From: Selaginella moellendorffii | Lineage: Eukaryota; Plantae; Lycopodiophyta | Direction of reading: 5' to 3' | Length of the DNA: 64,000 bases | Assembly: GCF_000143415.4 (NCBI RefSeq) | Contig: NW_003314347.1 | Coordinates: 395,438-459,437 of the forward strand | Shown: positions 5,321-52,412 of the stretch, in pieces | Layout of the letters: the number at the start of each line of letters is the position of its first letter | Numbering within the stretch: the first letter of the stretch is position 1 | Position numbers and translations under genes: made by a program | The notes under the pieces: generated by a model | Database searches by the model: none | The model's input: the letters and a program-made list of their open reading frames with translations, nothing else | What the model was told of the DNA's origin: nothing

Positions 5321-7011
5321 ATGGACAAGAAAAGGAGTGGCAATGGCGGAGGTAGCGGAGCCGCGGGCAAGAGGCAGCGACTGATCGATGGAAGGAGGCC
5401 TTCCAGGTTCGTATTCTTCGCGGCAGGGATTTGGAAGGATTTCCCCGTGGAAATTAGCGCTGCTCTGTGCGAGGCCTACCGCGCCGGCAGGGAAATCGCG
5501 GAGATTTTCTTTGCGAGCTGTCATCTGGCGGTGTTCTTCGCGCATATGATCCAGCTAAACACCGGGACTGGATACAGGAACTCGATCGGTTGGTTTGACA
5601 GCGATGGAGAGTTTTCCAGCCCGATCCAGCCATTCGAGGGCCCTGGATCGGTCGACGATGTGGAGAAGCTCCTTGGCGGTGGAAAGGCTTCCTTGAGTGC
5701 ACGGCAAGGAAGCTCGATCTCTACCACCGACACGGACGCGGCTTGTTCCGCCGTGGAAGACGAGGGTGGCGAAGTGGAAGACGTGACTTCTAGCCGCAGC
5801 AAGCTCGCCAATCTCGTGGTTTCCAGCGGTGGCAGGCTCGCGAAGCTCGAGGCTGGCGATCCAAAACTCGTCGACGTCAAAGCAGCGTTTCTAGCGGGGC
5901 TCGGGCGACTGTCGGTGGTGGCCGATGTTACTTCGGTGTGCAAAGTTCGTTACGACTGTCCTGGCGGTCAGGCTCGCCGAGAAGCGTTTGAGACGCTCAG
6001 CGATCTCACGGCCAAGGTGCGAGGCGGGGATGCGAATTTGCAGCAGGCTTGGTACGGGTGTTCTCGAAACGAGCTTCTGAGTGTCATCAAGCATGGTTTT
6101 GGACGTCCGTCGGTGGACTCCACCTACGGTGTGGGGATATATCTTAGTCCGGAGAGTCTCTCTCGCCTGAGGTAAGTGCTTATGCTTTGTTTTGCGACGC
6201 GGTGAGACGTGATTGTCTTTCGTTCTTGTGCAGTTGCAGAGGCGCGGATATTGACGAAAATGGCGAGCAGCATGTCTTGCTGTGCCGTGCGATTCTTGGC
6301 AAAGCTGAGCTTGTGCGAGCAGGGAGCAAGCAGTTCCATCCATCCAGCGATTTGGTTGACACCGGTGTTGACAATCTGGCGAATCCGAAACGCTTCATTG
6401 TGTGGAGCACACGCATGAACACGCATATTCTGCCGCTCTACGTTGCCAGCTTCAAGTTTCCACGCAAGTGGCACGGTTAGTAGAAGCTCTCTTTTTTCCA
6501 CTTTCATCGTTTACACCTTGGCTCTTGTTCCCTCGCAGGTATTATGGAGGCATCAGCCAAGTGCAGCAACTCTTCCGAGATCAAGGAGAAAGTAATCGCA
6601 CCGAAGGTGTTTTTCTTTTTCATTTCTTTTTCCTTAATGCTTTAGGAGTAACGTAGTCCAATTTTCTTTGTTTAGCAGTCAAGTGTGACGGTGCCCATGC
6701 TGTTCTCGGTGCTCAAGCCCGAGCTTTCCTCGTCGGAGATGAATATAGTAGTCCAGGATTACTTGGAGCTCAAGGTAGTTCGCTGTTTTCTTGTCGGCCA
6801 AGTCTAAAGTCAATTTATCCTCTTGAAGAATGCTAAGATCTCCCGCGAGGAATTTCTGAAACGGGTGAGGACTCTCATTGGTGACGAGAAGCTGAAAAAA
6901 ATCCAGGAGCAAGTCTTTCGAAGCAGCGTCCTTTGTGGCTTCCTGATATGCCAGAGCCAGAACAAGCTTGCGGAGCATCAGGCTCACAGCGGTGCGAAGA
7001 TCCACATCTAA
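5321..7011 (+). CDS. RCD1/SRO-family protein (WWE-like + PARP-like + RST), multi-exon
   Basis: N-terminal WKDFP...MIQLN...IGWFD (WWE-like); PARP-like AWYG, HGFG, YGVGIYLSP, DENGEQHVLLCRAILG, SKQFHPS, DTGVD, FIVWS..MNTHILP.YV; RST-like ISREEFLKRVRTLIGDEKL. Confidence 0.88.
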
Positions 7012-24688: not shown

Positions 24689-25239
24689 TTACTTCTCCTT
24701 TGCCGTGAAGGATTCGCCGCAGCCGCAAGTGCCGGTAGCGTTGGGATTTAGAAACACGAATTCCGACCTGCGAGGATTGAGAGATCTTAGAATTGGAGCT
24801 GGGATTTCTTGACAACTTTGGAACTTTTCTCTCGTCCAGGAAGAACTTCAAACTTACTTGAGACGATCTTCGATGAAATCCATCTTGGTGCCGATGATCT
24901 TCATCAGCGCTCGCGGGTCGATCAAAACCTTGACGCCTTTGTCCTCCACGAGCTCATCGTGGCGCTCGGCTTGATCTGCAAGAGGAAGATAAGCTTTTCT
25001 CTCTCTCTCGCAAGAAAAGGAAGAGAAGCAGAGGACTGAGGCTTGCCTGCGTAGTTCATGGTGTAGGAGTAGCCATTGCATCCCCGGACCTTGACACCCA
25101 CGCGCAAGTAATCTTTGTTCCGCAAGTCTAGCAATTGCCGGATCCTCTTGGCCGCGCTGTCGCTCAGCGCAATCGCTTGCTTCTTCCGGGACGAGGAGGC
25201 TTGCCTCAATCCCTCCCTGGCGGCGCACGCTGCTGCCAT
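24689..25239 (-). CDS. A-type Fe-S cluster assembly protein (IscA/ISA1-like), 3 coding exons
   Basis: LRVGVKVRGCNGYSYTMNYA / DELVEDKGVKVLID...GTKMDF / SEFVFLNPNATGTCGCGESF; all three conserved Cys present; stop at 24689-24691. Confidence 0.93.
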
Positions 25240-27689
25240 TCCTGACCTGCGCTATAGAAGAAAGCCCTTCCCAGTGAGTCACAAGCGCGAGATCGCCGCT
25301 CTCTCGCTTCTCCTACGTCGAATCGGTCACAAGATTTCAAGGGAGCTGTGGAGCTAACCTGAACATAGCCTCCGCATCATCCTCGCCCCTCTCGCGCCAC
25401 AAGCCCTAAAATCGCACAAACCCTAGGAGACGAATATTCCCTTTTATTGCTAACTACATGTTTTAATCTGGATTACAGAGAAAAGTTTCCCAATTGAAGA
25501 ATATGCTTGGATCATATATTGGATAGCATTGAATATACCCATATTATCTAAGCTTAAATGTTATTTAGTTTCATCAAATGGATAATATTTAGAATTGTTT
25601 ATATAAGTTGATTTCAAGCATTATTCAATACTATGCATGCACAAAAACAAAATGGTGTAGGAAACTTATCATCTTTATGTGGAGTTTGGAAGTTGTGGCA
25701 ACTAAGGCCAATTCTTTCTTACAGGCATGGAGGATTTCCTTTTTAAGGGTTTTTCATGTTTGGCATTCAGGCATTTTGGCTGCCACATCATTAAAATTCC
25801 TTGTATATTCTAAGAACTAAATATATAAATATAAAGATATTTTAAATACTAATAATTATAATTATAATACAAATACATATTAGAAAATTAAAGCTTGCAA
25901 ATTATTGTAGAAATACTCACTCTTTGCTTCAATTGTAAAAGTCTTGTAGTCCTACAGCTAAAGGCTCACCTCAATAAATCCACCAAGCTATGTAGATCCA
26001 TCAATAAAAGCTCATAGCCCTAATGTTCATTTTTCAACTTAAACTCGTGAACTTGCATTTTGCCCTAAAATGGATCAATGTGAATCCAAAAATGAGGGGC
26101 TTCTTGTGTAGTGGCAAGAGGACAATTCCAAAGTCTTTTCATGCTTATTAATGAAGATTAGGGATTTATACTTTAACAGCTAAACAATGGATGTATTCAA
26201 ACTTTGTTATTACTTTCTACAAGGGCTTAATCTCGAGGGCAACAACTAAGCTCACCAAGATTTATAATTGCTCTAGAAATTGGTTGAAAGCTAGAAACAA
26301 TAATAAAGAAAGAATATAAAAAAATAAACTTGTAAGGTTTGTAAATATATATATGTATATATATGTATTACCCTAGCTAGGTAATACACTAATTATGGTA
26401 CTATAGCATATAAATCGTTTATTTGGGATTAAATTTGACCCATCCATTCTTATATATAAGTGCTAACTAATATATCTATTCCCATATCCCGAGCATTCAC
26501 ATTGGTGGAGATCAGGGATATTGCAATTTGTCCCTAAAGGGCAAAGCTTTTTTGGCAATGTTTTTCTTTAGTGTTCAGGATCATAGTTTTTGTTCTTATT
26601 TCTTCATTCTCTTTTAAATCTAAATTTGTATGAGCTTTTTGTGAGATCTAGAACTCTAGTTATCACTATACTTAGATCTACTCTTTCTTCTTACAATCAT
26701 TGCATTCTCTTCTTCTACCATGCTATGCTGTTATTGATTAAAGAATATGTCACTTGAGGTTGCTAATGTTGCTTGTAGGATTAAATTTTTAGTGCTATAG
26801 GGTATGATCATGTTAGTGTTATGCCCATTTTTGATGTGTTGACATCTCCAACTTCCATGGGATGTGATTACACAATTTGTTCTATTCTTGGTATTTTAGC
26901 ATCTCTCATTGATGTGGAGCATGATTATGATATTGATTGGCAAGTTATAGATGATGTAATCCAGTTCTTGGAGATGTTTGAAAATCAAGTTTATAGGAAG
27001 ACAATGTATATGAGCTTAAATGAATTCCAAATCATTTTGTCGAGCTTGATTATTATGGAGATAGTTTTGGAGATGAAGTAGAGATTTCACAGGGTAAGTG
27101 TCAATCCTTCAATTTGCCATTTAGTCCTTTCTTTTTACCTTCTGCTCTTTCTTAACTTTTTTTTTATTTCTTGGCTTAAACCAACATTTTATATTCTTAA
27201 TATTTCTTCCTCCTCTATAGTGTTTCTTTTTTATAGTATGTTGATCATCTATGACTTTCATGATTTTCATTCTTAGTCTAATATTGAATTGAGTGTTTTA
27301 TGTCCTCTTTATACTAATTTAGATGTTAAATATATGCATGAAGTTGAGAATCTTGCTTTTATGTTGTTGACAAAGTCTTTGATCAATTCTAGTGTTAAAT
27401 ATTCCTATATTCTAATAGTTGAGTTTCTTTGGCAAAAATTCAAGTTGTGTCCCCACTTATTAGTGATGTTGAGAGCCTTTGTTTTACCATTGTTGTTGAA
27501 AAGTTTATATATTCCCTTGAAAGTATGGATATTATTATTGATTTTCTTATCTCAAGTATTGAGTTGTGTATTGACTATAAACAACTAATTTTTCCATTCT
27601 ACTTTAGTCACTTAACCACACCTCCAACAACTTGGAGGAGTCTTATTTATAACTTCCATATGTCCAATTCAAGACTTAGGGCTTGCTAA

Positions 27690-36320: not shown

Positions 36321-36589
36321 CTAACTTTGGACTTCCCAATGGTTATCTCATCACCCAACACTTGAGTACAACCTTCCTAGGCCAAATTAACCTTTCCTAG
36401 CCAAAATGGCTCCATTGGGTCCAACCCCCACACTCTCCCTTTTGGAACCCCCTATAGCCCTCCCCCCTAAGGGGATGATCACTTTAAGCTTTTGTATTAG
36501 TATTAGTATTAGTAGTATAGTCTTCGGACTCGGACTTGGTCTCAGTCTCGGTTTCAGACTCAAACTTGGTCTTGGTCTTGGTCTCAGTC

Positions 36590-36900
36590 TCAATTCCATC
36601 TTGGACTCCATCTCGGACTCCATCTTGGACTCCATCTCGGACTCCATCTTGGACTCCATCTCGGATCCATCTCGAACTCCATCTCAGACTTCATCTTGGG
36701 TCCATCTCAGACTTCATCTCAGACTCCATCTTGGGTCCATCTCAGACTTCATCTCAGACTCCATCTTGGGTCCATCTTGGACTCCATCTTAAGTCCATCT
36801 CGAAATCCATTTCGAATCCATCTTGTACTCCATCTCGAACTCCATCTCGGGTCTATCTCGGACTCCATCTTGGGTCCATTTCAGACTTCATCTTGGATCT
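36590..36900. repeat. 12-bp minisatellite (GACTCCATCTYG)n, preceded by 6-bp GGTCTY repeats
   Basis: Direct reading of the sequence; explains the low-complexity ORFs MESK/MESE and SILD/SISD. Confidence 0.9.
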
Positions 36901-38742
36901 TTCTACGTGTCATGTGTTGATCCTTTTGTATCTCTTTTTTAAAAACTCACTTATTGCTCGTTTCATGCTCCTTCCTCGAGCACTTTATTGGGAGTTCCAT
37001 TTTCGCTCTCGACTTTTTAAGTTGGAGCTTTTAGTCCATATATGTTACACTCATTTGGCTTCCACCTCAACCATTATCATATGGCACCCTTTCGGCTCTT
37101 CTTTGGGGCCTAGGGATTTTATGTCTCACATTGACAAGGTTGAGTGGTGTGAATATTTTGCTTCTATTATGGTGGCCAAAGTATTTTATGATAAGAAGTT
37201 CTGTATTTTCTAAGTTTTGAACATTTGTCCTTTTAATTTCCCTACTTTTGCCTTGTCAACTGCTACAAATTCCTTTTCTAACTTTTTTTTTTTTCGAATG
37301 AGGGAGTAGAGAGGATAGATAGGAGTTCAGCCCCAACAATAGAGTGAGGACAAGTAGATACAGTAATAAAGCAAAGACAAATGATATGGATTGTGGAGTG
37401 AGGACAAACATAGTAAATTTGAATGGAAAATTCAACCTTGATATAATAACCCTAAACAAAGACAATAGTGGAATGAGGTCAAACATAAATAATGGAGTGA
37501 GGACGAATGCGTCTAAATAGAGTTAGTGCTTCAAAACTTTTTTTCTTTCAAAGAGGGGATAAAGAAGATATGAAGAATAAATGGAATGAGTTCAACCTCT
37601 TATGTGCAGTGCTAAACAAAGGTATAGGTTATATGTCTAAATTAACATAAGCCTTGGATGTTAATCGAAGGGAAGATGCAAAATTAGGATCTACTTATGG
37701 CCGTAAGTCTAAATTAACAATGGTCTCAGAGGATTATTAGCTCCCAAACTTAAACATGGGATATATCGTTTATTACAATGGCATTTCATAAATTATAGTG
37801 ATTCTTAAAATTTCTTGCTTTAATTCAAAGTTATGGCTTCAAGGTTGGAATGAGCATTTGGCAATTGCACATGAAGTTATAATTGGTTCATTAGGATTTT
37901 ATAATTAACTAATGTTTATGCTATGGTTTTGGGTTTTATTTCAATCATGGTTGCTAACAACTTTATTGGTAGTTTTATGTGAGTTTCAAATTCTTGTGGT
38001 AATTTATAATTGCTCAGTTTTGTTCCATCTAATTTATTGTCATCACCTTTTCATCTTCTAGAGGGGAGGATGGTATAAAGTTTGTAAATACATATATGTA
38101 TATACATATATTAACCTGGCTAGGTAATACACTAATTATGGTACTATAGCATATAAATCGTTCATTTGGGACTAAATCTAGTCCATCCATTCTTATACCT
38201 ATTCCCATATTTTAACCACTCACAAACTGAGTTTTATAATTTTATTTTAGATTTATAAAAATAAAATTTAAAATAAAGATATTCCATGATGCCCAACACT
38301 AAAAACCCTTAAAGTGGGCACACTGTTTTTGGATCAGCCACAGAAACATGCTTATAATATCATCTCTAATTTTTATGGTTTTTGCTACTGTATGCAGCTG
38401 CCAATACATGCCTCATTCAGTGGCAGACAACTTGTTTTCTAGATGGCAAGTCTAAACAGCTCAACAGCACCAAAACGTGCAGCTCCAAAAGTGACCTTCC
38501 ACCGACAGTGCAATGTGTGGCGGTGAGTTCCGTGATTGTAGGGACATACAAGAAATTATGAACCGTTTAAAAGGCAAGAAGTGGAGAAAAATTCCAATGT
38601 TACAATCCAAAACATTGTCAAACTCCTCCCACTTACACAGGCAATTACCTTTACACTTTCGGTGCATGAGACTTTGACTAAATGATTAGTTTCAGTCATA
38701 GGCTTTATAAATTTGCATAGCATGAAGTGATCAGCTGAGAAG

Positions 38743-40152
38743 ATGATAATCATTAGCTTTGCTTGCTTGCTCAAGTTTGGATGTGGAGACAATGGCCCCC
38801 GGGGAGATCTCCTCCGCAGGGCTCTCCAGCACTCCTCCTTCTTGGCCTATTCTTGCGGGGAGCTCGATCGCACTGCCGCAATCTCGACAATCTCGCGCAA
38901 ATTCAAGCTCACGGACCCAGCTCTCGTGGATTCCATGCTGCTCGAGGCCGCTTCCAGCTGCGAGGTGGACAAGGAGCTACTGTCACTGCTCCAGTCAACG
39001 AGGCAGCAGCTCCTGGGATGGATTGATATTCCTCCACAAGAGTGGGAGCGAGTTTACAGCCTCTTCCCGGTGTCGCTCTGGAAGAACTTCGCTACAATCT
39101 CCCGCGATCTAGATTCCCTCCTTGGAGATATCAGGTCCCATGCTGTGATTGTCGATAAAAGCGTGGAGATGGCCGCGCTACATGCCTTCGAGAGCTTGCT
39201 CGCTCTCCCGTATGCCTCGCCCAACAAGAAAGCTTGCCAGGACTTCTTGAAGCGTCGGTTCCTGCTGCCTCGAGCTGTGAAGCTGGGGATGGATCGAGTC
39301 AAGGAGGAGGTGAGATCCAAGCAGCTCAAATCACTCTACCTGCTTGACAATGGCCGGCACGAGCTCGTCTCCGAGATCTTCTTTCCCTGCGTGGCGGCCT
39401 GGTGCCTTCCGGAGATCATTCCTCTCGGCTGGATGAAATATCTCCAGGTACTGATCAAGCGCGGCCATCCCTTCGGTTACTTCGGTGCCGACGTCTCGCG
39501 CTATCCGCCGGACATCGACACCATGTCGACTTGTGTCTCCACACTTTTTGATCTTAGTCTCGTCACCTCCGCGCAAGCTATGCACTTTCTGGAGATTTGT
39601 CTCGAGAACGTCAACGATCAAAACCAGCTTCTCACGTACCTGGACGTGGAGCGGCCTCGAGTGGATCCGGTCGTCATAGCCAACGTTGTCTATCTCGCCT
39701 ATGCGCTCTCCATGGAAGATCACCCGGTTGTCCGCCACAACGAGAATCTGATCCAGAGATATCTGTTAAGCGGCGGATTCGTATACGGGACTCGCTATTA
39801 CCTCAGCCAGGAGGACTTCTTGTTCATGTATGGCCGGGTCCTCGCGACGTTTGGAGAGAAGAGGGAGATTCCCAACTTTGATCTCGTGTATCAAGCGATG
39901 GAGGCGGCTCTCGTCAACCGGATCGGGAACGAGACCGAGTCGAAGCCACTGGACGTTGCCAAAAGGATTCTGCTCAGCAGGGGTTTTGGAATCCGGAACA
40001 CGATAGATGTAGACTTGCTCCTCAAGATGCAGAACGAGGATGGTTCCTGGCCTTTGCAAGTGCTCAGCAATCTTCCATCTGCTAAAGGTGGTGTCTTCAA
40101 TTCGGTGGTGGACTTGAGCTTTGCGGTGAGAGCACTGCAAAGTCAAGATTGA
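38743..40152 (+). CDS. Intronless microbial-type HAD-like/class II terpene cyclase (AstC/drimenol-synthase-like); intact copy
   Basis: 469-aa ORF with YPPDIDTMS (DxDT), FGYF, TYLDVERPRVDPVVIANV, GTRYY and LLKMQNEDGSW (QW motif). N-terminal SSFLAYSCGELD...KFKL resembles a HAD cap, but the catalytic DxD is missing. TATAAA at 38706. Confidence 0.8.
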   Translation: MIIISFACLLKFGCGDNGPRGDLLRRALQHSSFLAYSCGELDRTAAISTISRKFKLTDPALVDSMLLEAASSCEVDKELLSLLQSTRQQLLGWIDIPPQEWERVYSLFPVSLWKNFATISRDLDSLLGDIRSHAVIVDKSVEMAALHAFESLLALPYASPNKKACQDFLKRRFLLPRAVKLGMDRVKEEVRSKQLKSLYLLDNGRHELVSEIFFPCVAAWCLPEIIPLGWMKYLQVLIKRGHPFGYFGADVSRYPPDIDTMSTCVSTLFDLSLVTSAQAMHFLEICLENVNDQNQLLTYLDVERPRVDPVVIANVVYLAYALSMEDHPVVRHNENLIQRYLLSGGFVYGTRYYLSQEDFLFMYGRVLATFGEKREIPNFDLVYQAMEAALVNRIGNETESKPLDVAKRILLSRGFGIRNTIDVDLLLKMQNEDGSWPLQVLSNLPSAKGGVFNSVVDLSFAVRALQSQD

Positions 40153-40261
40153 AAGAGTCGATTATAAGTTGCATATAGAAAAAATCTACCTGGATGCGAT
40201 AAGTTTTCTCCTCCTCATCTTGACATGACAATAGTGAAAACAAGCACGTTAGCACTCCAAC

Positions 40262-40670
40262 GGTCAGGCCCTCAAAGCGAAAATATCACGTGAGTCAGAC
40301 AAGGAAACACAGTGTCTTTTTGGACAGGAAGAACTTTAAACTTACTTGAGACGATCTTCAGATGAAACCCATCTTTGTGCCGATGATTTTCATCAGCGCT
40401 CGCGGGTCGATAAAACCTCGTCGTGGCGCTCCGTTTGATCTGCCAGAGGAAGGAAGCATTTGCCATAAGTCTTTCTCTATCTCGCAAGAAAAGGAAGAGA
40501 AGCAAAGGATTGATTGTATCCTAGCTTGCCAATAATGTAGGAGTTCTTAGCGATCGCTTGCTTCTTCCGGGACGCACTGTCATTACCTGCGGTGTCTTCC
40601 CAGCGAGTCACAAGAGATCGCCGCTCTCTCGCCTCAAGGGATAGCCTCCGCATCAGACGAATATTCCTTT
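40262..40670 (-). pseudogene. Chimeric fragment: IscA 5' part joined to a MATE intron/exon sliver
   Basis: 40326-40670 is a deleted copy of 24837-25443; 40262-40322 matches MATE 48617-48674. Confidence 0.8.
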
Positions 40671-40960
40671 TTGGGGCTACCTGTAGAAAAGATAGAAAAA
40701 GTTTACCTTCGAATATGACAGGTACAATATTATATTATACCAATTCAAAATCTAAATAATAATATTCTTTTGGCTGCTGCAATGGAGGTCCTGTTGTGAG
40801 CAGCCAGGAAGCAGCATTTGTTGTTCCAGCGCGATTTCTTTTTCTATTTCTTTGTGTGGTTCTTTGTGAACTGCTGCTTGGGTCTTGTGAATCGGTATAA
40901 AGTTTGATTACGCAATGAGGGATGCCAAGTCTATGTTCCACAAGATGCTGGCAGAGTCGC

Positions 40961-41084
40961 CTGCTTGGAAGCAACCACTGTCTCGGTCATATGCGGCGAG
41001 AATGATTCTTTAAGAATGTTCTTTAAATGTTCTTTAATTGTTAATCTATAAACATTCATTGAGACAGTGGTTGCTTCCAAGCAG
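40961..41084. repeat. Perfect 24-bp inverted repeat with a 76-nt AT-rich spacer
   Basis: CTGCTTGGAAGCAACCACTGTCTC (40961-40984) and GAGACAGTGGTTGCTTCCAAGCAG (41061-41084). Confidence 0.9.
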
Positions 41085-41608
41085 CTGCGAGAATCCGGAA
41101 AGAATGTTTAGAAATTATAAACAAAACTTCTTGCCAATTAAACATTTGCTTACGAATACCTTAACATTTCCAAAAATACAAAATGTGGCAAAATGTTAGC
41201 CTACTCAGTCGGGGCAAGGAACTGGGAAGTTGCAGCATCTCCCTCAAGCCAAATATCTCTCACAGGTGTTTTTGTGGGCACTTTCTAGCTGACGTCTGTA
41301 GAATATTGATCATCTCTATGGATTTTGCTATTGTACTGAATAGTTGCAGCTGCCAATGCGTGCCTCGTTCAGTGGCAGATAACTTGTTCTCTAGATTGCA
41401 AAAGAATATGATTAAAGATGTAGAAGCTCATGATTCAGAAGCAAGCTTGAACTGGCTGGGCAGCGAGACAAAGACCCCCTATGCTCAATGTCCACACCAT
41501 GTATAGCTCCAAACCATACCAAAAGCGAGCATCCACCACTGTTGACTAAATAACAATCTCTAAAAGTAGCCTTAACAACGCTTTAGAGTATAAATTAGCG
41601 TGAAGAAG

Positions 41609-42963
41609 ATGATAATTATTAGATTTGCTTGCTTGCTCAAGTTTGGATGTGGAGACAAGGGAGATCTTCTCCGCAGGCACTCCTCCTTCTTGGCCTATAC
41701 TTTCGGAGAGCTCGATCGCACTGCCGCAATCTCGACAATCTCGCGCAAATTCAAGCTCACGAAGCCACCTATCGTGGATTCCATGCTGCTCGAGGCCGCT
41801 TCCAGCTGCGAGGTAGACGAGGAGCTACTGTCACTGCTCCAGTCAACGAGGCGGCAGCTCCTCGGATGGATAGATATTCGTCCACAAGAGTGGGACCGAG
41901 TTTACAGCCTCTTCCCAGTGTCGCTCTGGAAGAACTTCGCTACAATCTCCCGCGATCTAGATTCCCTCCTTGGAGATATCAGGTCCCATGCTGTGATTGT
42001 CGATAAAAGCGTGGAGATGGCCGCGCTAACACGCATTCGAGAGCTTGCTCGCTCTCCCGTATGCCTCGCCCAACAAGAAAGCTTGCCAGGATTTCTTGAA
42101 GCGTCGGTTCCTGCTGCCTCGAGCTGTGAAGCTGGGGATGGATCGAGTCAAGGAGGAGGTGAGGTCCAAACAGCTCAAATCACTCTACCTGCTTGACAAC
42201 GGCCGGCACGAGCTCGTCTCCGAGATCTTCTTTCCCTGCGTGGCGGCCTGGTGCCTTCCTCTCGGTTGGATGAAATCTCTCCAGGCACTGATCGAGCGCG
42301 GCCATCCCTTCGGTTACTTCGGTGCCGACGTCTCGCGATATCCGCCGGGCATCGACACCATGTCAACTTGTGTCTCCACACTTTTTGATCTTGGTCTCGT
42401 CACCTCCGCGCAAGCCATGCATTTTCTGGAGATTTGTCTCGAGAACGTCAACGATCAAAACCAGCTTCTCCTGGACGTGGAGGCCTCGCGTGGATCCGGT
42501 CGTCATAGCCAACGCTGTCTATCTCGCCTATGCGCTCTCCATGGAAGATCACCCGGTTGTCCGCCACAACGAGAGTCTGATCTAGAGATTTAATTATACG
42601 GGACTCGCTATTACCTCAGCCAGGAGGACTTCTTGTTCATGTATGGCCGGGTTCTCGCGACATTTGGAGAGAAGGGAGATTCCCGACTTTGATCTTGTCT
42701 ATCGAGCGATGGAGGCGGCGCTCGTCAACCGGATCGGGAACGAGACCGAGTCGAAACCACTCGACGTTGCCAAAAGGATTCTGCTCATCAGGCGTTTTGG
42801 AATCCGGAACACGATAGACGTGGACTTGCTGCTCAAGATGCAGAACGAGGATGGTTCCTGGCCTTTGCAAGTGCTCAGCAATCTTCCACCTGCTAAAGGT
42901 GGTGTCTTCAATTCGGTGGTGGACTTGAGCTTTGCGGTGAGAGCACTGCAAAGTCAAGAATGA
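41609..42963 (+). pseudogene. HAD-like/class II terpene cyclase, copy 2 (frameshifted)
   Basis: Highly similar to 38743-40152 but frameshifted near 42029, 42480 and 42590-42660; DIDT changed to GIDT. Confidence 0.9.
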
Positions 42964-43079
42964 CATACAGAAAAAATCTACCTGGATGCGATGAGTTTTC
43001 TCCTCCTCATCTTGACATTGCGGACAATAGTGAGATCATAATAGATATTTGAAGGACTTCTCTTGAATTTCCTACTTCC

Positions 43080-43617
43080 CTGCGCGAGTAAAAATGCAGG
43101 TCAGAATGTTATAATCCGGAAACTCGGTATCAACTCAGTAACGGTGTGACCAGTTGCATTCACTCCAAAGCCTTTTGTGCCTGCGTGAAAGAAATGGGAA
43201 ACATTAAAACCATGACCACCGACTAAAAACTCATGACCACCGTATACCTGCTTGTTCCAGTTGGTTCTTACAGAAATAGTGAGCAGTGAGATCGCTTGCG
43301 TCGAAAGGCCACACAGAATCCCAATGATCAAGCCCTGAAAGCGAAAAAATCACGTGAGTCGGACAAGGAAACACAGTGTCTTTTCGGCCCACCTTTCTCG
43401 TTCATGTGAACGAAGGGCAGCACGTAAGCCACGACCAATCCAACAGCGTAATAAGAGCCAAGGTTGGCAAACGCGGCAAAAGCTTGCCATCCACATCCAC
43501 GAGCAACACCTGTTCACAGCAGACGGAAAAATCTAAACCATGTCACCGTATGCCATTTTTTTTTCAAACCCGAGACCACTCCTTGGAACGCATCCACAAC
43601 AACGAACGGCATCAGAT
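43080..43617 (-). pseudogene. 3' fragment of the MATE gene (last three exons plus part of one more)
   Basis: Homologous to 48380-48921 (GVARGCGWQ, GLIIGILCGLSTQ, NWNKQ). Confidence 0.85.
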
Positions 43618-43621
43618 TCTC

Positions 43622-44270
43622 GAGATCTTATATTGGAGCTGGAACTTTTCTCTCGAAGAATGAAATGGAGGAAGAACTTCATGTAACACTCTTGAAGAAT
43701 GCATATGTGATCTGGGTTGGCATTGGCCCTGAGCACATCGATATGCTCTTTCGTCACTCTCTTGGACAGATTATTGATCCGCTCGTTGTAGAAGAGCTCG
43801 TCCTCCCATGGATTGGTGCCATCCTCCCAATTATGCGATCTTTGATGAAATCCGATGATTTTCTCATCAGCGCTCGCGGGTCGACCGCCGTTGTCCTCCA
43901 CGAGCTCGTCATGGCGCTCCGCTTGATCTGCCAGAGGAAGGAAGCATTCGCCATAAGTCTTTCTCTATCTCGCAAAAAAAGGAAGAGAAGCAAAGGATTG
44001 ATTGTATCCTAGCTTGCCTGCGTAGTTCATGGTGTAGGAGTAGCCATTGCATCCCACGCGCAAGTAATGTTTGTTCCACAAGTCTAACAAATGCCGTATC
44101 CTTTTGGCGGCGCTATCACTCAGCGCAATCGCTTGCTTCTTCCGCGACGAACACGCTTGCCTCAATCCCTCCCTGACCTGCCGTAAAGCCCTACTCTCGG
44201 GGCTGTGGAGCTAACCTGAACATAGCTCCCACGCCTATAAGCCGCAAGAGATGAATATTCTCTTTTAAGG
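43622..44270 (-). pseudogene. IscA 5' fragment containing an inserted ~180-bp unrelated segment (43655-43835)
   Basis: RKKQAIALSDSAAKRIRHLL...CNGYSYTMNYA matches 25050-25220; internal deletions; last exon absent. Confidence 0.85.
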
Positions 44271-47018: not shown

Positions 47019-48211
47019 ATGATTTGCTTGCTTTGGATGTGGAGACGATGGCGAGATCTTCTCCACAGGGCTACTCCTCCTTCCTCGCCTATGCTTGCGG
47101 GGAGCTCGATCGCGCTGCCGCAATCTCGACAATCTCGCGCAAATTCAAGCTCAAGCAGCCAGCTCCCGCGGATTCCAAGCTGCTCGAGGCCGCTTCGCTG
47201 CGAGGAGCTACTGGCACTAGCTCCTCGGATGGATTGATATTCCTCAACAAGAGTGGGAGCGAGTTTACAGCCTCTTCCCGGCGTCGCTCGGGAAGAACTT
47301 CAATACAATCTCCTGCGATCTAGATTCCCTCCTTGGAGATATCAGGTCCCATGCCGTGATCGTCAACAAAAGCGTGGAGATGGCCGCGCTACACGCATTC
47401 GAGAGCTTGCTCGCTCTCCAGTATGCCTTGCCCAACAAGAAAGCTTGCCAGGACTTCTTGAAGCGTCGGTTCCTGCTGCCTCGAGCTGTGGAGCTGGGCA
47501 AGGAGGATGTGAGATCCAAGCAGCTCAAATCACTCTACCTGTTTGACAACGGCGGGCAGGAGCTCGTCTCCGAGATCTTCTCTCTGCCTTCTGGAGATCA
47601 TTCCTCTCGGCTGGATGAAATCTCTCCAGGCACTGATCGAGCGCGGCCATCCCTTCAGTTACTTTGGTGCCAACGTCTCGTGCTATCTGCTGGACATTAA
47701 CATCATGTCAACTTGTGTCTCCACGTCAAGGGATGCACTTTTGGGAGATTCTTGAACACTTCATCAAGTCACTTGATTTATTCATTCTAACTTTGTTATA
47801 TCATCAACATAACCTTCCTTACTCACACTAACCTTTCATAGCTCCATTAGTTCTATTAGAATCTTCTTTCTATTATCTCATTGTTTTGGGCTTTCATCTT
47901 TAGACGTGGACTCAAACTCAAACTGAGACTTAGTCTTGATCTTCAAATTTAAATGTGCTACACTTAATAATGAACAATTTTAAAGTTATATAGAGTTGTC
48001 TCGAGAACATCAATGATCAAAACAAGCTTCTCACGTTACCTGGACGTGGAGCGGCCTCGCATGGATCCAGTCATAGCCAACGTCGTCTATCCTGCGTATG
48101 CGCTCTCCATGGAAGATCACCCAGTTGTCCATCTAGAGACATCTGTTAGGCGGTGGATTTGTTTACGGGACTCACTATTACCTCAGCCAAGCACTGCAAA
48201 GTCAAGATTGA
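47019..48211 (+). pseudogene. HAD-like/class II terpene cyclase, copy 3 (heavily degraded, ~245-bp insertion at ~47750-47995)
   Basis: Recognisable AYACGELDRAAAISTISRKFKL, KRRFLLPRAV and YLDVERPRMDPV; multiple indels; DIDT changed to DINI; region encoding the QW motif deleted. Confidence 0.88.
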
Positions 48212-48422
48212 AAGAGTCGATAATAAGTTGCATATAGAAAAAATCTGCCTGGATGCGATGAATTTTCTCCTCCTCATCTTGACATTGCAGACATAGTGAG
48301 ATCACCAAAACAAGCACGGTAGCTATAAAAGACCAATTCAGATGGATATTTGAAGAACTAACTATTGAATTTCTTTCTTCCCTGCGCGAGTAAAAATGCA
48401 GGTGACAGTGTTACACTCGGTA

Positions 48423-50248
48423 TCAACTCAGTAACGGTGTGACCAGTTGCATTCGCTCCGAAGCCTTTTGTGCCTGCATGAAAGAAATACGAAACATAAA
48501 AACCATGACCGGCGATTAAAAACTAAGGGTGGCATACCTGCTTGTTCCAGTTGGTTCTTACAGCAATAGTGAGCAGTGAGATCGCTTGCGTCGAAAGGCC
48601 ACACAAAATCCCAATGATCAGGCCCTGATAGTGAAAAAATCACGTGAGTCAGACAAGGAAACTCAGTGTCTTTTCGGCCCACCTTTCCGTTCATGTGTAG
48701 AACGAAGGCCAGCACGTAAGCCACGGGCAATCCAACAGCGTAATAAGAGCCAAGGTTGGCAAACGCGGCAAAAGCTTGCCATCCACATCCGCGAGCAACA
48801 CCTGTTCACAGCAAACAGAAAAATCTTAAACCACGTCACCGTATGCCATTTCCATTTTCAAACCTGAGACAACCCCTTGGAACGCATCCACAATACTGAT
48901 TGTAACAACGAACGGCATCAGCCTAGAAACGGAGCTCACAACCTCGGCTTCGTTGCTGAACAGGTGCCCCAGCTTGTGCCTGGCCAGGAACAGAATAGTA
49001 CTCACGAGTACAGCGTCAATGGCTGCAAAGAATATGGATGTTTTGAATGCCAGCTTCGCTGCATTCGTCTCTCCAGCTCCTAGCGCATTGCTTATACGGA
49101 CACTAGAATAGAAATCGAAATTTGACTCCACTGTGAAACAAAATCAAGCTGCGACTTACCTTGCAGCAGTACTCAAGCCATAAGCGATCATGAAGAAAAT
49201 TTGGATCGTGTTCAATCTGGAGTAGAAAATAAGAAAACGAAAGTTTATCCATCGAGGAAAAAGGCAAAAGAGCAGCCACTCACACAATTGTGAAGGTGGA
49301 GGTCTCGAGCTGAGGATCTGGCAGCAGCCCTGAGAGTAAAACAAGAGCCTCAAGTGACCACCATTCCAAACTGCAAGGAAGAATCCAATAAACGTGGAAA
49401 ATAAACCAAGCAAAAACTTACCAGAGCATGAGCAAAGAAGGAATGGCGAGAGCCATGAACTGTTTGAGGTCTCGAAACATTTCCATCGAGAGTCCACCCC
49501 AGCAACGCCTACAAGCGGGTGTGCACGCCACCACCGTGGAAAGAACTGCTACGTTGATCCAGCTCGCCAGGCTCGCCGATAGTGCCGCCCCTTTGATTCC
49601 CATCCCCAGCTTGTAGATCGACACCCAGCAGAACAAAGCGTTGAGCAGCAAATTCACGAACGAGGCCCCGAGCATCACGTAGACCTGGCTTTGCGACTGG
49701 AGGAACTTGTCCAGCGGCTGGAGCAGCACGAACGCGAAGAGCTCCGGCAGCAAGTATCTCGCGAAAACCCCGGCGTTTTTGGAGATCTCAGGGTCTTGGC
49801 CAAAGAACAAGAGGACGTGCTCCATGAAGAACCACACAATCGCGATTGGAATGGCGGCAAGGAACTCGATGAAGACGGCCCTTTGCAAGTAGACCCCAAG
49901 GCGCGTGTAGAGCTTGGCGCCATAGGCCTGGCCGCAAAGAGTCTCGAGAGCGCTCCCCAGCCCCAGCTGCCGAAGAGAAATGGATCGAAATATCACCAAG
50001 AATCAATCACCAATCGATCTTTCTCGCAAGATTTCACTCACCAGGATGCTGTAGCCGGTGACATTGGCCAGCGATCCAGCGATCGCGGCGCTCGCGAGCT
50101 CCAGCTCTCCCAGATGCCCCACGAACATGATCGCCACGGTCGTGACGGCGAATTGGAGGAGCGTGACGCCGACCATGGGGAGCGCGATCCATGCCTGGAA
50201 GCGCACCTCGATCCAGAAGGCGCTCGGTCGCTCGACGAGCAACGCCAT
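48423..50248 (-). CDS. MATE (DTX) efflux transporter, multi-exon, apparently intact
   Basis: MFVGHLGELELA, GLGSALETLCGQAYGA, FLQSQS, LAIPSLLM, SVRISNALGAG, QGVVSGVARGCGWQ, NLGSYY, TNW-like NWNKQ; stop at 48423-48425. Confidence 0.93.
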
Positions 50249-50385: not shown

Positions 50386-52412
50386 ATGAAGGCTCTGCCA
50401 TCGCGGCGAAGCTGGGGCGTGATCCACGCCTGGAGGAGGCGATCTATCTCATCAGGTGATCCACACAGCAGTAGCGGCCCTAGCAGCAGTAGCAAGCCCG
50501 ATGCCTCGCAATCGGCCGTGCACCCGGCGATGCGAGGGCGCCCCGAAGAGCTGAGCGACTCCGAGGAGGGCAGCAACAATGCAGCGAGGGAAAAGAAGCG
50601 ATGGGGGCAGCAGCTGGCTTGGCTTAGTGGAATTCTCGAGCCGGCATTGAATCTCTATCACAAGGCATTGCCACCAGGTGAGAGATATCTTCTTCTTCTC
50701 TTTGCTTTCTAGAGTTTTGCTTGAATGAACCAAAAGAGAGATGGAGCTGAGTTATTTTCTCGTTTGCGTGGATGTGTGAAGGAAAGTCTGAAGGAAACGC
50801 TGGTCCTCCAAGCACTCGCTCGCTCGTAGACATCGCTGCTTGTCTTCACAGAAGTAACTATGGCATGCAGCAGTGGGGACTAGGAGATTTAACGCTCGGC
50901 TTGTATCTCCTTTCTCTTCGCCATGCTGCCGAAGGCGCTGTGGACGTGGTCGAAGGAGTCCAAGTTAAATCCGATGTCCTGGTGAGTTCTTCGTTTCTTT
51001 CTTGGAGGAGAAAAGTTTTAACAAGCCTTCTTGATTGATCACAAGGTGGAAGATTTTATCTACTATGTGGAGCTTGCCAAGGGAGCCTACTTGAAAAACG
51101 AGGCAGCGCTCGCACGGATTTCCATGCTCAAGGAGAGCAACGTTGTTAAGTTTGTGGATAAGGCCAGCGTGATGCGACCTGCGTATTACATCGGGTTGGA
51201 TCACAGGGCGCAAACTGTGATCCTGGGAATCCGCGGGACTCAGTCGATTCATGATCTCATCACGGACTTGGCATCACACGGCGAGGAAGAAATTTTCAAC
51301 GAGGGCAATGCTCATTTTGGGACAGCACAAGCTGCAAGGTGGTTTTTTCACAACGAGGTGCAAACTTTAAGGAAATGTTTGCAAGAAAACATGGTGAGCC
51401 TATCTTTGTTCTTGTGCTTTTCATGTTTTTGTGAAGTAACTTCTTTCGTGGTTTTAAAGGGGTATGGACTTCGTATTGTTGGCCACTCTTTGGGTGGTGC
51501 CACAGCATCTTTGCTTGCGATGATGCTACACAAACGATCGGTGGAACTTCTTGGTATTCCTCCGGAACAAGTTGCGGCCGTTGGTATTGCAACACCACCC
51601 TGTGTCTCCAAAAGTCTGGCTGTAGAATGCGCAGGCTACGTGACAACGCTAGCTTTACAGGTTTGTATTTTGTCTTTGCTTGTCAACTGGAAAGATAATC
51701 TCGAACAGTTTCAAGCAGTATGACGTAATACCACGAATGAGTGCTGCTGCATTGGAAAGACTGCGAGACGAGATACTTCTGCTCGATTGGTAAGTGATGC
51801 TTAGAACATTCCTAGCTTACAGCGATTTTTCTTCTTGTATCAGGATGAATGCCTTCAAGGAGGAGGAGAATCGCACAGGCCTTCTCGACATGGTGGCCAG
51901 CACACTTCAAGCGATCTCTTCTGTGCAGGAAGCAGCGCGTAGATACGCCATATATGCAAAGCTTCGTGGTCTTTCAGATGAACCAAGTAAGTTTCCATCA
52001 TTCTGGTTAGAAAAAAGAAGAGTTTGCACTGACTGCAGCCTATACAGAACAAGAAGCCACTCCACAAAATCCAAAAAACCAAATCATGGAGAAGGACGAA
52101 TCTTCAAAGAGTGAGGCAACAAAGACCGTAAAGGAACATGAGGAGCTATACTCACCAGGAATTCTTTATCATCTTTGCGGTCGAGCTTCGATGAAAGATC
52201 AACATGGTGACAGTGCTGCTCAAGGATGCTCGCTCTGGCTGGTCAATCGCGATGCGAGATTTAGCAGGATTGTGCTCACTGGCTCGATGCTATCCGATCA
52301 CAAATGTGACAGCCACTACTACGCCTTGCGAGATGTTCTCAAGAGCCTCCCAAGGTCAGAGAGGCGATCACCATTGCCGTCAGTTCGAGACAACACGCTG
52401 AACGATAAGTAG
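50386..52412 (+). CDS. Class 3 lipase family protein (alpha/beta hydrolase), multi-exon
   Basis: RPAYYIGLDH, ILGIRGT, AHFGT, IVGHSLGGATA (GxSxG), TPPCVS, YDVIPRMS, LYSPG, MLSDH. Confidence 0.9.

What the first reader, a model, noticed from the sequence alone, without database searches (positions are those of the whole stretch)
38743..40152. Intronless fungal-type HAD-like/class II terpene cyclase in a land-plant genome
Seen: a 469-aa intronless ORF among intron-rich genes, with PPDIDT (39511-39522), TYLDVERPRVDPVV, GTRYY and QNEDGSW. Established: these motifs mark the class II cyclase domain of fungal HAD-TC fusion enzymes (AstC, DrtB, drimenol/albicanol synthases), which cyclise FPP to drimane diphosphates. 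This family is distinct from canonical plant TPS and from class I microbial-type terpene synthase-like (MTPSL) enzymes. Inference: a horizontally acquired sesquiterpene cyclase in a probable lycophyte. Related enzymes may already be reported from other seedless plants, so novelty needs checking.
Basis: partly seen in the sequence, partly recalled or inferred. Interest (0 to 1): 0.9.

Follow-up and report, generated by a model that had tools for sequence, protein, structure and literature searches.

The report
Bacterial-type terpene cyclase gene in Selaginella
The spikemoss Selaginella moellendorffii carries an intact, intron-free gene for a terpene-ring-forming enzyme so far described only from bacteria and fungi; its closest relatives are bacterial rather than fungal, and most RNA from the locus comes from the opposite strand.

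Summary
The 469-aa ORF at 38743-40152(+) and all four motifs are present.

**What it is.** Sequence, precomputed Pfam (PF28380 AstC-like_C) and a confident AlphaFold model (pLDDT 95) place it in the HAD-like/TC-beta class II cyclase family (AstC, DrtB, AsDMS). The cyclase acid/base residues and their helpers are conserved. The HAD domain has lost its nucleophile Asp (Ser5) and has a deletion over motif III, so it is probably phosphatase-dead, as in AstC.

**Where it sits.** The genome is Selaginella moellendorffii. The gene lies among plant genes, is intact in both haplotypes, and heads a tandem array with two decayed copies. Substitution patterns show purifying selection on the sense frame.

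- It is not fungal-type. In trees it groups with a metagenomic orphan, a bacterial-operon protein and Streptomyces proteins. Union with fungi is rejected (AU p 0.013).
- A liverwort (Riccia sorocarpa) has a separate, fungal-affiliated homologue.
- RNA-seq shows that the dominant transcript is a five-intron antisense RNA starting in a duplicated IscA gene fragment. The unspliced sense mRNA is about ten-fold rarer.

No paper in the searchable library reports this enzyme family in land plants. Enzyme activity is untested.

The parts
38743..40152 (+). Intact intronless CDS, 469 aa: HAD-like domain fused to a TC-beta class II terpene cyclase domain (AstC-like family)
   Evidence: ORF. PDB sequence hits to AsDMS and AstC. 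Precomputed Pfam PF28380. AlphaFold2 pLDDT 95.4, pTM 0.90. Foldseek top hits are AsDMS full length (2e-23) and DrtB (4e-24).
38743..39252 (+). N-terminal HAD-like domain (about residues 1-170), degenerate. Motif I reads I-I-I-S-F-A-C-L-L where relatives have F-D-x-G-x-V. There is a deletion of about 12-15 residues over the motif III lysine. Motif IV is D137-K138 where relatives have DD.
   Evidence: Alignment A1. Fold matches to AstK phosphatase (residues 2-170) and to the sEH N-terminal domain and L-2-haloacid dehalogenase.
39265..40140 (+). TC-beta (alpha/alpha-barrel) class II cyclase domain, about residues 175-466
   Evidence: Foldseek matches to MstE, SHC-like cyclases, SsDMS and beta-only bacterial cyclases over query residues ~174-466.
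39511..39522 (+). Catalytic D257-I-D259-T260 motif (DxDT). D259 corresponds to the AstC acid D273 and D257 to the AstC base D271.
   Evidence: Translation. Mapping through P0020 to AstC numbering. Roles of these residues from PMC13244436.
38695..40640 (-). Dominant spliced antisense transcript. Minus-strand GT..AG introns at 39283-39339 (57 nt), 39589-39639 (51), 39748-39801 (54), 40135-40189 (55) and 40270-40344 (75), or alternatively 40219-40345.
   Evidence: read laying joints with CT..AC ends. First mates lie about 10:1 on the + strand. Contigs from two further studies carry the same joints. Intron ends checked.
40325..40635 (-). 5' exon region of the antisense RNA. It is a diverged duplicate (76-86% nt) of an IscA-like gene exon whose parent lies at 24837-25310.
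   Evidence: blastn. The parent exon 24857-24997(-) hits IscA/YfhF at 1.9e-5.
41604..43033 (+). Tandem copy 2, a pseudogene. It is about 91% nt identical, has several frameshifts, and its motif has mutated to G-I-D-T. It is nearly silent in RNA.
   Evidence: The gene model SELMODRAFT_426805 (P0003) patches over the breaks.
47024..48323 (+). Tandem copy 3, a fragmentary pseudogene (about 83% nt identity, large deletions)
   Evidence: tblastn and blastn.

Best explanation
The ORF is a genuine, selectively maintained Selaginella moellendorffii gene for a HAD-like/TC-beta class II terpene cyclase of the AstC-like family. It was acquired horizontally as a two-domain unit, from a lineage whose known members are bacterial (Streptomyces and an uncultured operon-bearing organism), not fungal. 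Inferred mechanism: D259, positioned by N314 and Y353, protonates the terminal double bond of a prenyl diphosphate. The substrate is most likely cytosolic FPP, because there is no transit peptide. The cation cascade closes a bicyclic, drimane-type skeleton and D257 acts as the base. The HAD domain lacks the nucleophilic Asp (Ser5) and the motif III region, so it should not hydrolyse phosphate. It probably only caps or holds the diphosphate, as in AstC. The product would then be a cyclic sesquiterpenyl diphosphate that needs a separate phosphatase or a class I synthase. The gene is expressed at a low level as an unspliced sense mRNA. It is overlapped by a roughly ten-fold more abundant five-intron antisense RNA, which starts in a duplicated IscA gene fragment and is most likely non-coding. 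Shown here: family membership, fold, conserved residues, genomic context, selection, strand and splicing of the transcripts, and tree position. Inferred: substrate, product, lack of phosphatase activity, direction and donor of the transfer, and any regulatory role of the antisense RNA.
For: Family and fold. Catalytic residues D257, D259, T260, R306, N314 and Y353 are all conserved against AstC numbering, with their roles taken from PMC13244436. Degenerate HAD domain: A1. AstC is likewise non-hydrolytic with non-canonical sites. Plant context: PPR, MatE, Lipase_3, DUF674, Slu7 and hexokinase neighbours on an 830-kb scaffold. Both haplotypes carry an intact 469-aa allele, with 27/1407 nt differences and no indels, while the flanks are 92-96% identical with many gaps. 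Selection: sense omega is 0.25-0.40 for copy 1 against copy 2 (0.18-0.32 over codons 147-469, the stretch the antisense ORF overlaps), against 1.4-1.6 for the in-phase antisense frame over that same stretch. The copy 1 lineage has 3 synonymous and 0 nonsynonymous changes since the split from copy 2. GC is 0.55 and GC3 0.68, host-like. Transcription. Sense-oriented reads cover only 38688-40066, none is spliced (0 against about 90 antisense junction reads), and they carry other-haplotype alleles (3 of 8, against 0 of about 20 for antisense-oriented reads). Phylogeny. In Streptomyces locus L008 a stand-alone HAD hydrolase lies directly upstream of the homologue. In L002 a class I terpene synthase lies directly upstream. 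Both fit a cyclase that hands on a diphosphate.
Against: No enzyme assay exists, so substrate and product are unknown. The AstC product-selectivity residues H447/Y448 align to N443/L444 here. Sense RNA is scarce and antisense dominates. Two of the three tandem copies are dead. HAD-domain omega between the haplotypes is about 0.87, which suggests relaxed constraint there. The pair sits on a long stem (0.81 plus 1.18 substitutions per site) and P0005 is also long, so long-branch attraction cannot be fully excluded. The AU groups were defined after seeing the tree. Only 17 of the 148 tree rows (16 of the 41 in the careful tree) carry organism labels. The bacterial nature of P0005 is inferred from gene arrangement only. 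The nearest relative, P0004 (35% identity), is from an unidentified, AT-rich, eukaryote-looking transcript.
Confidence: 0.6

Rival explanations
1. Relic on its way out: a horizontally acquired cyclase gene that is still intact by recency or weak selection but is no longer functional in planta, being effectively silenced by convergent antisense transcription.
For: Antisense RNA is about 10 times the sense RNA. Copies 2 and 3 are pseudogenes. The HAD domain evolves almost neutrally between haplotypes (omega 0.87). The haplotypes differ at 16 of 469 residues.
Against: There are no indels in 1407 nt in either haplotype, although the flanks are riddled with gaps. TC-domain omega is 0.21-0.29. There are 3 synonymous and 0 nonsynonymous changes on the copy 1 lineage. 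Every catalytic residue is retained. A distinct unspliced sense transcript population is present.
Confidence: 0.22
2. One reading: a fungal-type HAD-TC acquired from fungi.
For: The best reviewed structural match is fungal DrtB. AstC and DrtB are the best-known members. Fungi are common partners of lycophytes. The nearest relative P0004 has an AT-rich, eukaryote-like transcript end.
Against: The careful tree and both single-domain trees place it with P0005; the link to Streptomyces is well supported in the full-length tree (96/91) and the TC-only tree (86) but not in the HAD-only tree (36). AU rejects union with the clade of 19 fungi plus Riccia (p=0.013). The nucleophile position of HAD motif I is non-Asp in the same bacterial proteins (Asn), while Aspergillus P0020 keeps Asp (A1).
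Confidence: 0.1
3. Ancient vertical inheritance in streptophytes or land plants, with loss in nearly all lineages.
For: A second land plant, the liverwort Riccia sorocarpa, has a family member on a 52-Mb chromosome.
Against: A single clade of Selaginella plus Riccia is rejected (AU p=0.0004). Riccia groups with fungi and keeps a canonical HAD domain and DVDTT. Among 15 billion proteins the only relatives above about 30% identity are Selaginella's own copies and one orphan.
Confidence: 0.04
4. The real gene is the minus-strand one: the spliced antisense mRNA encodes a 314-331 aa protein (as in the annotated 321-aa model on the other haplotype), and the plus-strand ORF is incidental.
For: The isoform using joint 40218>40346 carries a 314-aa ORF from ATG 40466. 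A 321-aa minus-strand model is annotated in GL377585.1. This strand gives most of the RNA.
Against: That ORF is the exact reverse-complement frame of a GC3-rich gene with only 7 TTA/CTA/TCA codons. The two such codons in its span happen to lie in introns. Its omega is 1.4-1.6, against 0.18-0.32 for the sense frame. The equally used joint 40269>40345 cuts the ORF to 58 aa. The sense protein has deep homologues and a pLDDT-95 fold.
Confidence: 0.03
5. Microbial contamination or misassembly.
For: The family is otherwise microbial.
Against: The gene is embedded between plant genes on an 830-kb scaffold, and again on the 2.3-Mb allelic scaffold with the same neighbours (MatE). There are three tandem copies. 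Composition is host-like. The overlapping transcript has Selaginella-sized 51-57 nt GT-AG introns. RNA contigs come from at least four separate studies.
Confidence: 0.01

Closest known systems
AstC, drim-8-ene-11-yl pyrophosphate synthase of Aspergillus oryzae (PDB 22tz/22ty; PMC5024094, PMC13244436)
   Same: Two-domain HAD-like + TC-beta architecture. DxDT acid/base pair with Asn and Tyr helpers and the conserved Arg. The HAD domain has non-canonical active-site residues and is therefore non-hydrolytic, so the expected product is a diphosphate.
   Different: Only about 30% identity, and only over the TC domain (E 5e-17). It belongs to a different clade. Selaginella has Ser, not Glu, at the nucleophile position, plus a deletion over motif III and DK instead of DD in motif IV. 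The product-selectivity residues differ (N443/L444 against H447/Y448). The fifth motif residue is Met (DIDTM).
AsDMS, bifunctional drimenol synthase of Aquimarina spongiae (PDB 9mhs, 9m7d-f; PMC9128629, PMC12232559, PMC12365925), and fungal DrtB and AacA
   Same: Best sequence and fold matches over the full length. Same domain order and same cyclase motif position.
   Different: Those enzymes keep a working HAD phosphatase (Asp nucleophile, DDxxE) and release drimenol or a monophosphate. The Selaginella HAD domain lacks these residues.
Streptomyces 'hypothetical proteins' WP_133900367 (sp. KS 21), WP_362890005 (S. wuyuanensis), WP_400006577, and the uncultured operon protein P0005
   Same: Nearest named clade in the full-length and TC-only trees; the HAD-only tree leaves the Streptomyces link unresolved. 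They share the loss of the HAD nucleophile Asp (Asn in these proteins). They have the same length class and two-domain layout.
   Different: 24-27% identity. The Streptomyces proteins have the canonical DADDT motif. They sit in operons next to a stand-alone HAD hydrolase or a class I terpene synthase. None is characterised.
Microbial terpene synthase-like (MTPSL) genes of Selaginella and other non-seed plants
   Same: The same evolutionary theme: terpene-forming enzymes of microbial type in a seedless plant genome, outside the canonical plant TPS family.
   Different: MTPSLs are class I alpha-domain (ionisation-initiated) enzymes. This one is a class II beta-domain (protonation-initiated) enzyme fused to a HAD fold. 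The comparison rests on general knowledge, not on a test made here.
Riccia sorocarpa KAL3683812.1 (liverwort)
   Same: A land-plant member of the same Pfam family, located on a plant chromosome.
   Different: It belongs to the fungal-affiliated clade, keeps canonical HAD motif I and DVDTT, and has at least one intron. A single origin with the Selaginella gene is rejected.

Membership tests
HAD-like terpene cyclases (HAD-TC-beta; AstC / DrtB / AsDMS; Pfam PF28380 AstC-like_C) | C-terminal domain homologous to AstC-like TC-beta | tested here: met
   phmmer hits to AsDMS (3e-22) and AstC (5e-17) over residues 252-466. PF28380 is on record for this protein. My local Pfam copy lacks that model, so it returned nothing.
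HAD-like terpene cyclases (HAD-TC-beta; AstC / DrtB / AsDMS; Pfam PF28380 AstC-like_C) | DxDT(T) catalytic motif with the middle Asp as Bronsted acid | tested here: met
   D257-I-D259-T260-M261. It aligns to AstC D271/D273/T274. The fifth residue is Met instead of Thr, a variant shared only with P0004 among 118 aligned members.
HAD-like terpene cyclases (HAD-TC-beta; AstC / DrtB / AsDMS; Pfam PF28380 AstC-like_C) | Acid-positioning Asn and Tyr, and the conserved Arg (AstC N324, Y361, R316) | tested here: met
   N314, Y353 and R306 lie in the aligned columns.
HAD-like terpene cyclases (HAD-TC-beta; AstC / DrtB / AsDMS; Pfam PF28380 AstC-like_C) | N-terminal HAD (Rossmannoid) fold fused to the cyclase in one polypeptide | tested here: met
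   AlphaFold2 model with pLDDT 95.4. Full-length Foldseek alignments to AsDMS and DrtB. The N-terminal domain matches AstK, the sEH N-terminal domain and haloacid dehalogenase.
Bifunctional cyclase-phosphatases (AsDMS, DrtB, AacA type) | Intact HAD catalytic residues (nucleophilic Asp of motif I, motif III Lys, DD/DDxxE of motif IV) | tested here: not met
   Ser5 replaces the Asp. There is a deletion over motif III. D137-K138 stands where relatives have DD (A1). It should therefore not be filed as a drimenol synthase; it resembles non-hydrolytic AstC instead.
HAD-like terpene cyclases (any) | Cyclises FPP to a drimane-type (di)phosphate in vitro | not testable with these tools
   Needs recombinant enzyme and GC-MS or LC-MS.
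   It groups with P0005 (99/98) and with Streptomyces (96/91). AU p=0.013 against union with the fungal clade.
Horizontally acquired plant gene | Stable integration in the host genome, a patchy distribution, and a non-plant sister group | tested here: met
   Plant flanks, two haplotypes and a tandem array. Only one other plant was found, in another clade. The labelled sisters are bacterial. Direction and donor remain inference.

The most novel reading that the evidence does not exclude
Land plants acquired HAD-fused class II sesquiterpene cyclases at least twice and from different donors: a lycophyte from a bacterial lineage and a liverwort from fungi. This would give seedless plants a third route to terpene skeletons, one that is neither TPS nor MTPSL. 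In Selaginella the transferred gene would be active and governed by a cis-antisense RNA born from a duplicated IscA gene fragment.
Probability: 0.35. Interest if true: 0.78.

Novelty: new member of a known kind. Interest (0 to 1): 0.62.

Why it matters
Papers from 2022-2026 describe HAD-like terpene cyclases as bacterial and fungal enzymes, and describe plant drimane synthases as unrelated class I enzymes (PMC13244436, PMC9128629, bioRxiv 10.1101/2025.09.20.677545).

A selectively maintained member in a model lycophyte, plus an independent one in a liverwort, would extend the family to land plants. It would also add a class II counterpart to the known story of microbial-type terpene synthases in seedless plants.

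The case is a clean example of a transferred gene that keeps its intronless structure while the host lays a multi-intron antisense transcript over it. It also shows how annotation can then favour a spurious antisense protein model.

Practically, it names one concrete ORF to express and assay.

Tried and rejected
- **Upstream exon.** I first suspected a missing upstream exon carrying HAD motif I, as in gene model P0003, which splices into ...FGCGD. I rejected this for three reasons. Residues 2-10 align to the motif I strand of relatives and fold as strand 1. P0004 conserves them. Sense reads do not extend upstream of about 38688.
- **Local family searches.** Local Pfam and NCBIfam scans returned nothing for the protein. 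The local Pfam copy lacks PF28380.
- **Word-indexed protein searches.** The searches with the protein, with alignment A1 and with P0004 found only Selaginella copies or nothing new.
- **Collection scans.** The metagenome scan with A3 and the genome scan with P0005 found no relatives. A1 and A4 were too divergent to make search patterns.
- **Loose read ends.** Loose ends at 40553 and 40632 looked like further splice sites. They map to 25157-25323, a paralogous IscA-like segment, so they are cross-mapping reads and not joints.
- **Partner synthase.** No class I terpene synthase was found in the window by tblastn with the L002 neighbour.
- **Bacterial signals.** The bacterial promoter and terminator scan is uninformative for a plant gene.
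- **Earlier notes.** The search of earlier findings by words returned nothing.
Full report
**1. Observation**

The window holds a single 469-aa ORF at 38743-40152 on the + strand. An in-frame stop lies 15 nt upstream of the ATG (sequence).

**2. What the protein is**

phmmer against all PDB sequences hits the marine bacterial drimenol synthase AsDMS (9mhs, 3e-22; 9m7d, 1.4e-21). It also hits fungal AstC (22tz, 5e-17). All hits run over residues 252-466.

The protein collection records Pfam PF28380, named AstC-like_C, for this very protein. My local Pfam and NCBIfam copies returned nothing because they lack that model. An exhaustive HMMER search of 1.84 billion representatives gave 325 hits at E<=1e-3 and 107 at E<=1e-10.

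An AlphaFold2 model built on 118 of these sequences is very confident: mean pLDDT 95.4, pTM 0.90, and no disordered segment. A beta-strand starts at residue 2. The fold searches gave the following.
- **PDB:** Foldseek puts AsDMS first, over the full length (about 2e-23). Class II cyclase beta/gamma folds follow (MstE, SHC-like proteins, SsDMS). For the N-terminal domain it finds the soluble epoxide hydrolase phosphatase domain and L-2-haloacid dehalogenase.
- **Reviewed UniProt models:** the top hit is drimenol cyclase DrtB (4e-24, full length). The N-terminal 170 residues match the HAD phosphatase AstK.

The two-domain HAD-like + TC-beta identity is therefore established by both sequence and fold.

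**3. Catalytic residues**

I used the Aspergillus protein P0020 as a bridge. It matches AstC at 3.9e-94 with a fixed numbering offset. With it I mapped the AstC residues whose roles were shown by structure and mutagenesis in PMC13244436.

| AstC residue | Role | Selaginella residue |
|---|---|---|
| D273 | acid | D259 |
| D271 | base | D257 |
| T274 | motif | T260 |
| R316 | conserved Arg | R306 |
| N324 | positions the acid | N314 |
| Y361 | positions the acid | Y353 |
| H447/Y448 | product selectivity | N443/L444 |

All six catalytic and helper residues are conserved. The selectivity pair differs, so the exact product cannot be read off.

The HAD domain is degenerate (A1).
- Relatives with a working phosphatase read F-D-x-G-x-V in strand 1. 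Selaginella reads I-S-F-A-C-L, with Ser5 in place of the nucleophilic Asp.
- About 12-15 residues, including the motif III Lys, are deleted.
- Motif IV is D137-K138 instead of DD.

AstC itself has non-canonical residues there, binds no metal and has no phosphatase activity. Its HAD domain still caps the partner subunit's cyclase site and tunes the product. By analogy I infer a phosphatase-dead domain and a diphosphate product. This is inference, not a result.

**4. Whose genome, and is the gene really in it**

Paralogue names identify Selaginella moellendorffii (SELMODRAFT_426805 on the same 830,751-bp contig; SELMODRAFT_413221 on a 2.3-Mb contig).

Neighbouring ORFs are ordinary plant genes:
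- PPR proteins (8095-9948+, 56057-57415-)
- MatE (49418-49996-)
- Lipase_3 (51031-51720+)
- DUF674 (52853-53590-)
- Slu7 (57565-59133-)
- hexokinase (23280-23759-)

The second scaffold (GL377585.1 of GCA_000143415.2, locus L003) is the other haplotype. It carries an intact 469-aa allele that is 97% identical.

The window holds three tandem copies.
- **Copy 1** is intact.
- **Copy 2** (41604-43033) is about 91% identical, has several frameshifts, and its motif has mutated to GIDT.
- **Copy 3** (47024-48323) is about 83% identical and fragmentary.

The published gene models P0002 and P0003 are patched-up readings of copy 2. GC (0.55) and GC3 (0.68) are host-like. Contamination is excluded.

**5. 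Selection**

Between haplotypes the ORF has 27 differences in 1407 nt and no indel. The flanks are 92-96% identical, with 54 gap positions in 919 nt downstream.
- **Between haplotypes:** Nei-Gojobori omega is 0.60 overall, 0.87 for the HAD domain and 0.29 for the TC domain.
- **Copy 1 against copy 2:** omega is 0.25-0.40.
- **Copy 1 lineage, polarised with copy 3:** 3 synonymous and 0 nonsynonymous changes, against 3 and 3 on the copy 2 lineage.

The counts are small, but together they show purifying selection on the sense frame, strongest in the cyclase domain.

**6. Transcription: the unexpected part**

RNA runs from at least four studies hold about 0.6 of the sampled words of 38300-40400. 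I laid two raw-read runs and two contig sets on 37900-43800 at 97% likeness or better. Transcription covers 38690-40650. Its joints have CT..AC ends, which are GT..AG introns of the minus strand. I checked the intron ends directly.

| Joint | Skipped (nt) |
|---|---|
| 39282>39340 | 57 |
| 39588>39640 | 51 |
| 39747>39802 | 54 |
| 40134>40190 | 55 |
| 40269>40345 | 75 |
| 40218>40346 (alternative) | 127 |

First mates lie about 10:1 on the + strand. With the splice-site strand, this means a stranded library whose main RNA is antisense to the cyclase. Three of these introns cut out conserved cyclase sequence; GTRYY, for example, lies in the 54-nt intron. These RNAs therefore cannot encode the enzyme.

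The minority reads with the first mate on the minus strand have a depth of about 3 in X23 and up to 2.7 in X24. They form a separate population rather than strand leakage, for three reasons.
- They cover only 38688-40066 and vanish where the antisense depth is still 7-14.
- None of about 90 junction reads has this orientation.
- At 38912, 38916 and 38926 they carry the other haplotype's alleles in 3 of 8 reads, against 0 of about 20 antisense-oriented reads.

I read them as a low-level, unspliced sense mRNA with a 5' UTR of about 55 nt or less. This also supports ATG 38743 as the start. Copy 2 is almost silent.

**7. The antisense RNA**

Its 5' part (40325-40635) is a 76-86% identical duplicate of 24837-25310. 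The coding end of that parent segment is IscA-like (YfhF/IscA 1.9e-5). Loose read ends at 40553 and 40632 map to that parent locus and are cross-mapping, not splicing. The same fragment also follows copy 2 (43852-44018); behind copy 3 only the adjoining flank (48190-48677) was matched. It therefore belongs to the repeat unit, at least for copies 1 and 2.

With joint 40269>40345 the longest antisense ORF is 102 aa. With 40218>40346 a 314-aa ORF opens from ATG 40466. This corresponds to a 321-aa minus-strand model called on the other haplotype.

That ORF is the exact reverse-complement frame of the cyclase. The sense gene has only 7 TTA/CTA/TCA codons. The only two among codons 147-469 lie in antisense introns. 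Its omega is 1.4-1.6, against 0.18-0.32 for the sense frame on the same columns. I conclude that the antisense ORF is a by-product of sense codon bias and that the RNA is most likely non-coding. Whether it regulates the cyclase is untested.

**8. Relatives and origin**

The closest non-self relative is P0004, at 35% identity over both domains. It comes from a 1474-bp JGI metagenome contig (33.5% GC, an AT-rich tail with AATAAA, one frameshift). It shares the HAD deletion and the DIDTM motif and has no other relative in 5.8 billion clusters.

Next comes P0005, on a 3.5-kb contig where it sits between a class I terpene synthase and a SAM methyltransferase. All three genes are co-directional with about 73-nt spacers, which is a bacterial arrangement.

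A careful IQ-TREE (LG+C20 PMSF) of 41 full-length members gives this nesting.
- Selaginella + P0004: support 100/99.
- That pair + P0005: 99/98.
- That trio + three Streptomyces proteins: 96/91.

Two clades stand apart from this group. One holds Aquimarina. The other has 22 rows, whose labelled members are Auricularia, Calocera, Botrytis, Dentipellis, two Aspergillus, Exophiala (named DrtB), Colletotrichum and Kalmusia.

HAD-only and TC-only trees both recover pair+P0005 (SH-aLRT 94 and 90). The wider six-member group with Streptomyces gets 86 from the TC domain but only 36 from the HAD domain. The two domains therefore share a history.

AU tests reject placing the pair with the fungal clade (p=0.013).

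In Streptomyces locus L008 a stand-alone HAD hydrolase lies directly upstream of the homologue. This echoes the Ast cluster's separate phosphatases.

Caveats: the branches are long, the AU groups were chosen after seeing the tree, and most rows have no organism label. I rate horizontal acquisition at about 0.85 and a bacterial-affiliated source at about 0.65-0.7.

**9. A second plant**

One member of the clade that is sister to the fungi is KAL3683812.1 of the liverwort Riccia sorocarpa. It lies on a 52-Mb chromosome. Its gene span of 1584 nt for 452 aa implies an intron. It keeps canonical HAD motif I and DVDTT. Its two closest relatives come from unlabelled transcriptome-like contigs. A single Selaginella+Riccia clade is rejected (AU p=0.0004). 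Land plants therefore seem to hold this family at least twice, independently.

**10. Literature**

Searches combining Selaginella, lycophyte, fern, liverwort or moss with AstC, drimenyl, HAD-like or terpene cyclase found no report of this family in land plants. Recent papers present it as bacterial and fungal, and present plant drimenol synthases as class I enzymes. The library lacks most subscription journals, so prior publication cannot be excluded. The family itself is curated in Pfam, and the protein is a called gene product in the public assembly.

**11. Verdict**

This is a real, intact and constrained HAD-like/TC-beta class II terpene cyclase gene in S. moellendorffii. The observation and the family assignment are right. 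'Fungal-type' is wrong, because the affinity is bacterial. The gene is only weakly expressed under a dominant spliced antisense RNA.

It is a new member of a known enzyme kind in a new kingdom. I give moderate-to-high interest (0.62), limited by the lack of any activity data and by the low level of sense expression.

Earlier notes of this scan suggested a dead HAD domain (s1-341615) and a metabolic cluster with MATE and a hydrolase (s1-341566). I reached the first independently and tested it by alignment. For the second I only confirmed the neighbouring domains.

Noticed in passing
L004:5001-6584 (Riccia sorocarpa CM100799.1, 22.42 Mb): A liverwort chromosome encodes a 452-aa HAD-TC (KAL3683812.1) with canonical HAD motif I and DVDTT, and apparently with an intron. 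In the tree it is sister to the fungal clade, together with two unlabelled transcriptome-like sequences (P0064, P0115). It looks like an independent plant acquisition of the same enzyme family.
   Followed up: partly
window 40325-40635, 43852-44018 and 24837-25310: A fragment of an IscA-like (Fe-S assembly) gene is duplicated downstream of copies 1 and 2, in the opposite orientation (a further flank match behind copy 3, at 48190-48677, corresponds to 40131-40323 rather than to the IscA fragment). It supplies the 5' exon and donor site of the antisense transcript. The parent exon at 24857-24997(-) hits IscA/YfhF at 1.9e-5.
   Followed up: partly
L003:3148-4606 (-), equivalent to window ~39178-40636 (-): The public annotation of the other haplotype carries a 321-aa minus-strand protein model that is the reverse-complement reading of the cyclase. 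Substitution patterns (omega 1.4-1.6) indicate it is not a conserved protein.
   Followed up: yes
window 41183-42196 and L003:6001-6967: Gene models SELMODRAFT_426805 and SELMODRAFT_413221 are spliced-around readings of the frameshifted copy 2. They read out-of-frame stretches as protein.
   Followed up: yes
window 49418-49996 (-), 51031-51720 (+); L003:12690-12967 (-): MatE transporter and class 3 lipase ORFs lie just beyond the cyclase array, and MatE is also next to it on the other haplotype. I confirmed only the domains, not any functional link.
   Followed up: partly
L008:3984-4949 (+) next to 4992-6476 (+) (Streptomyces sp. NPDC046161); L002:3-992 (+): Bacterial relatives with a dead HAD domain sit directly after a stand-alone HAD hydrolase (Streptomyces) or after a class I terpene synthase (uncultured contig). 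This suggests a pathway logic in which the cyclase hands on a diphosphate.
   Followed up: partly
window 36400-36950: A degenerate 12/23/35-nt tandem repeat block (CATCTCGGACTC-like units) lies about 2 kb upstream of the gene.
   Followed up: no
runs X14 and X20: Runs labelled as two other organisms (coded B and C) hold about a fifth of the 31-mers of the locus, as expected for roughly 95% identical sequence. They may be related Selaginella species or mislabelled samples. The names are coded, so this could not be resolved.
   Followed up: no
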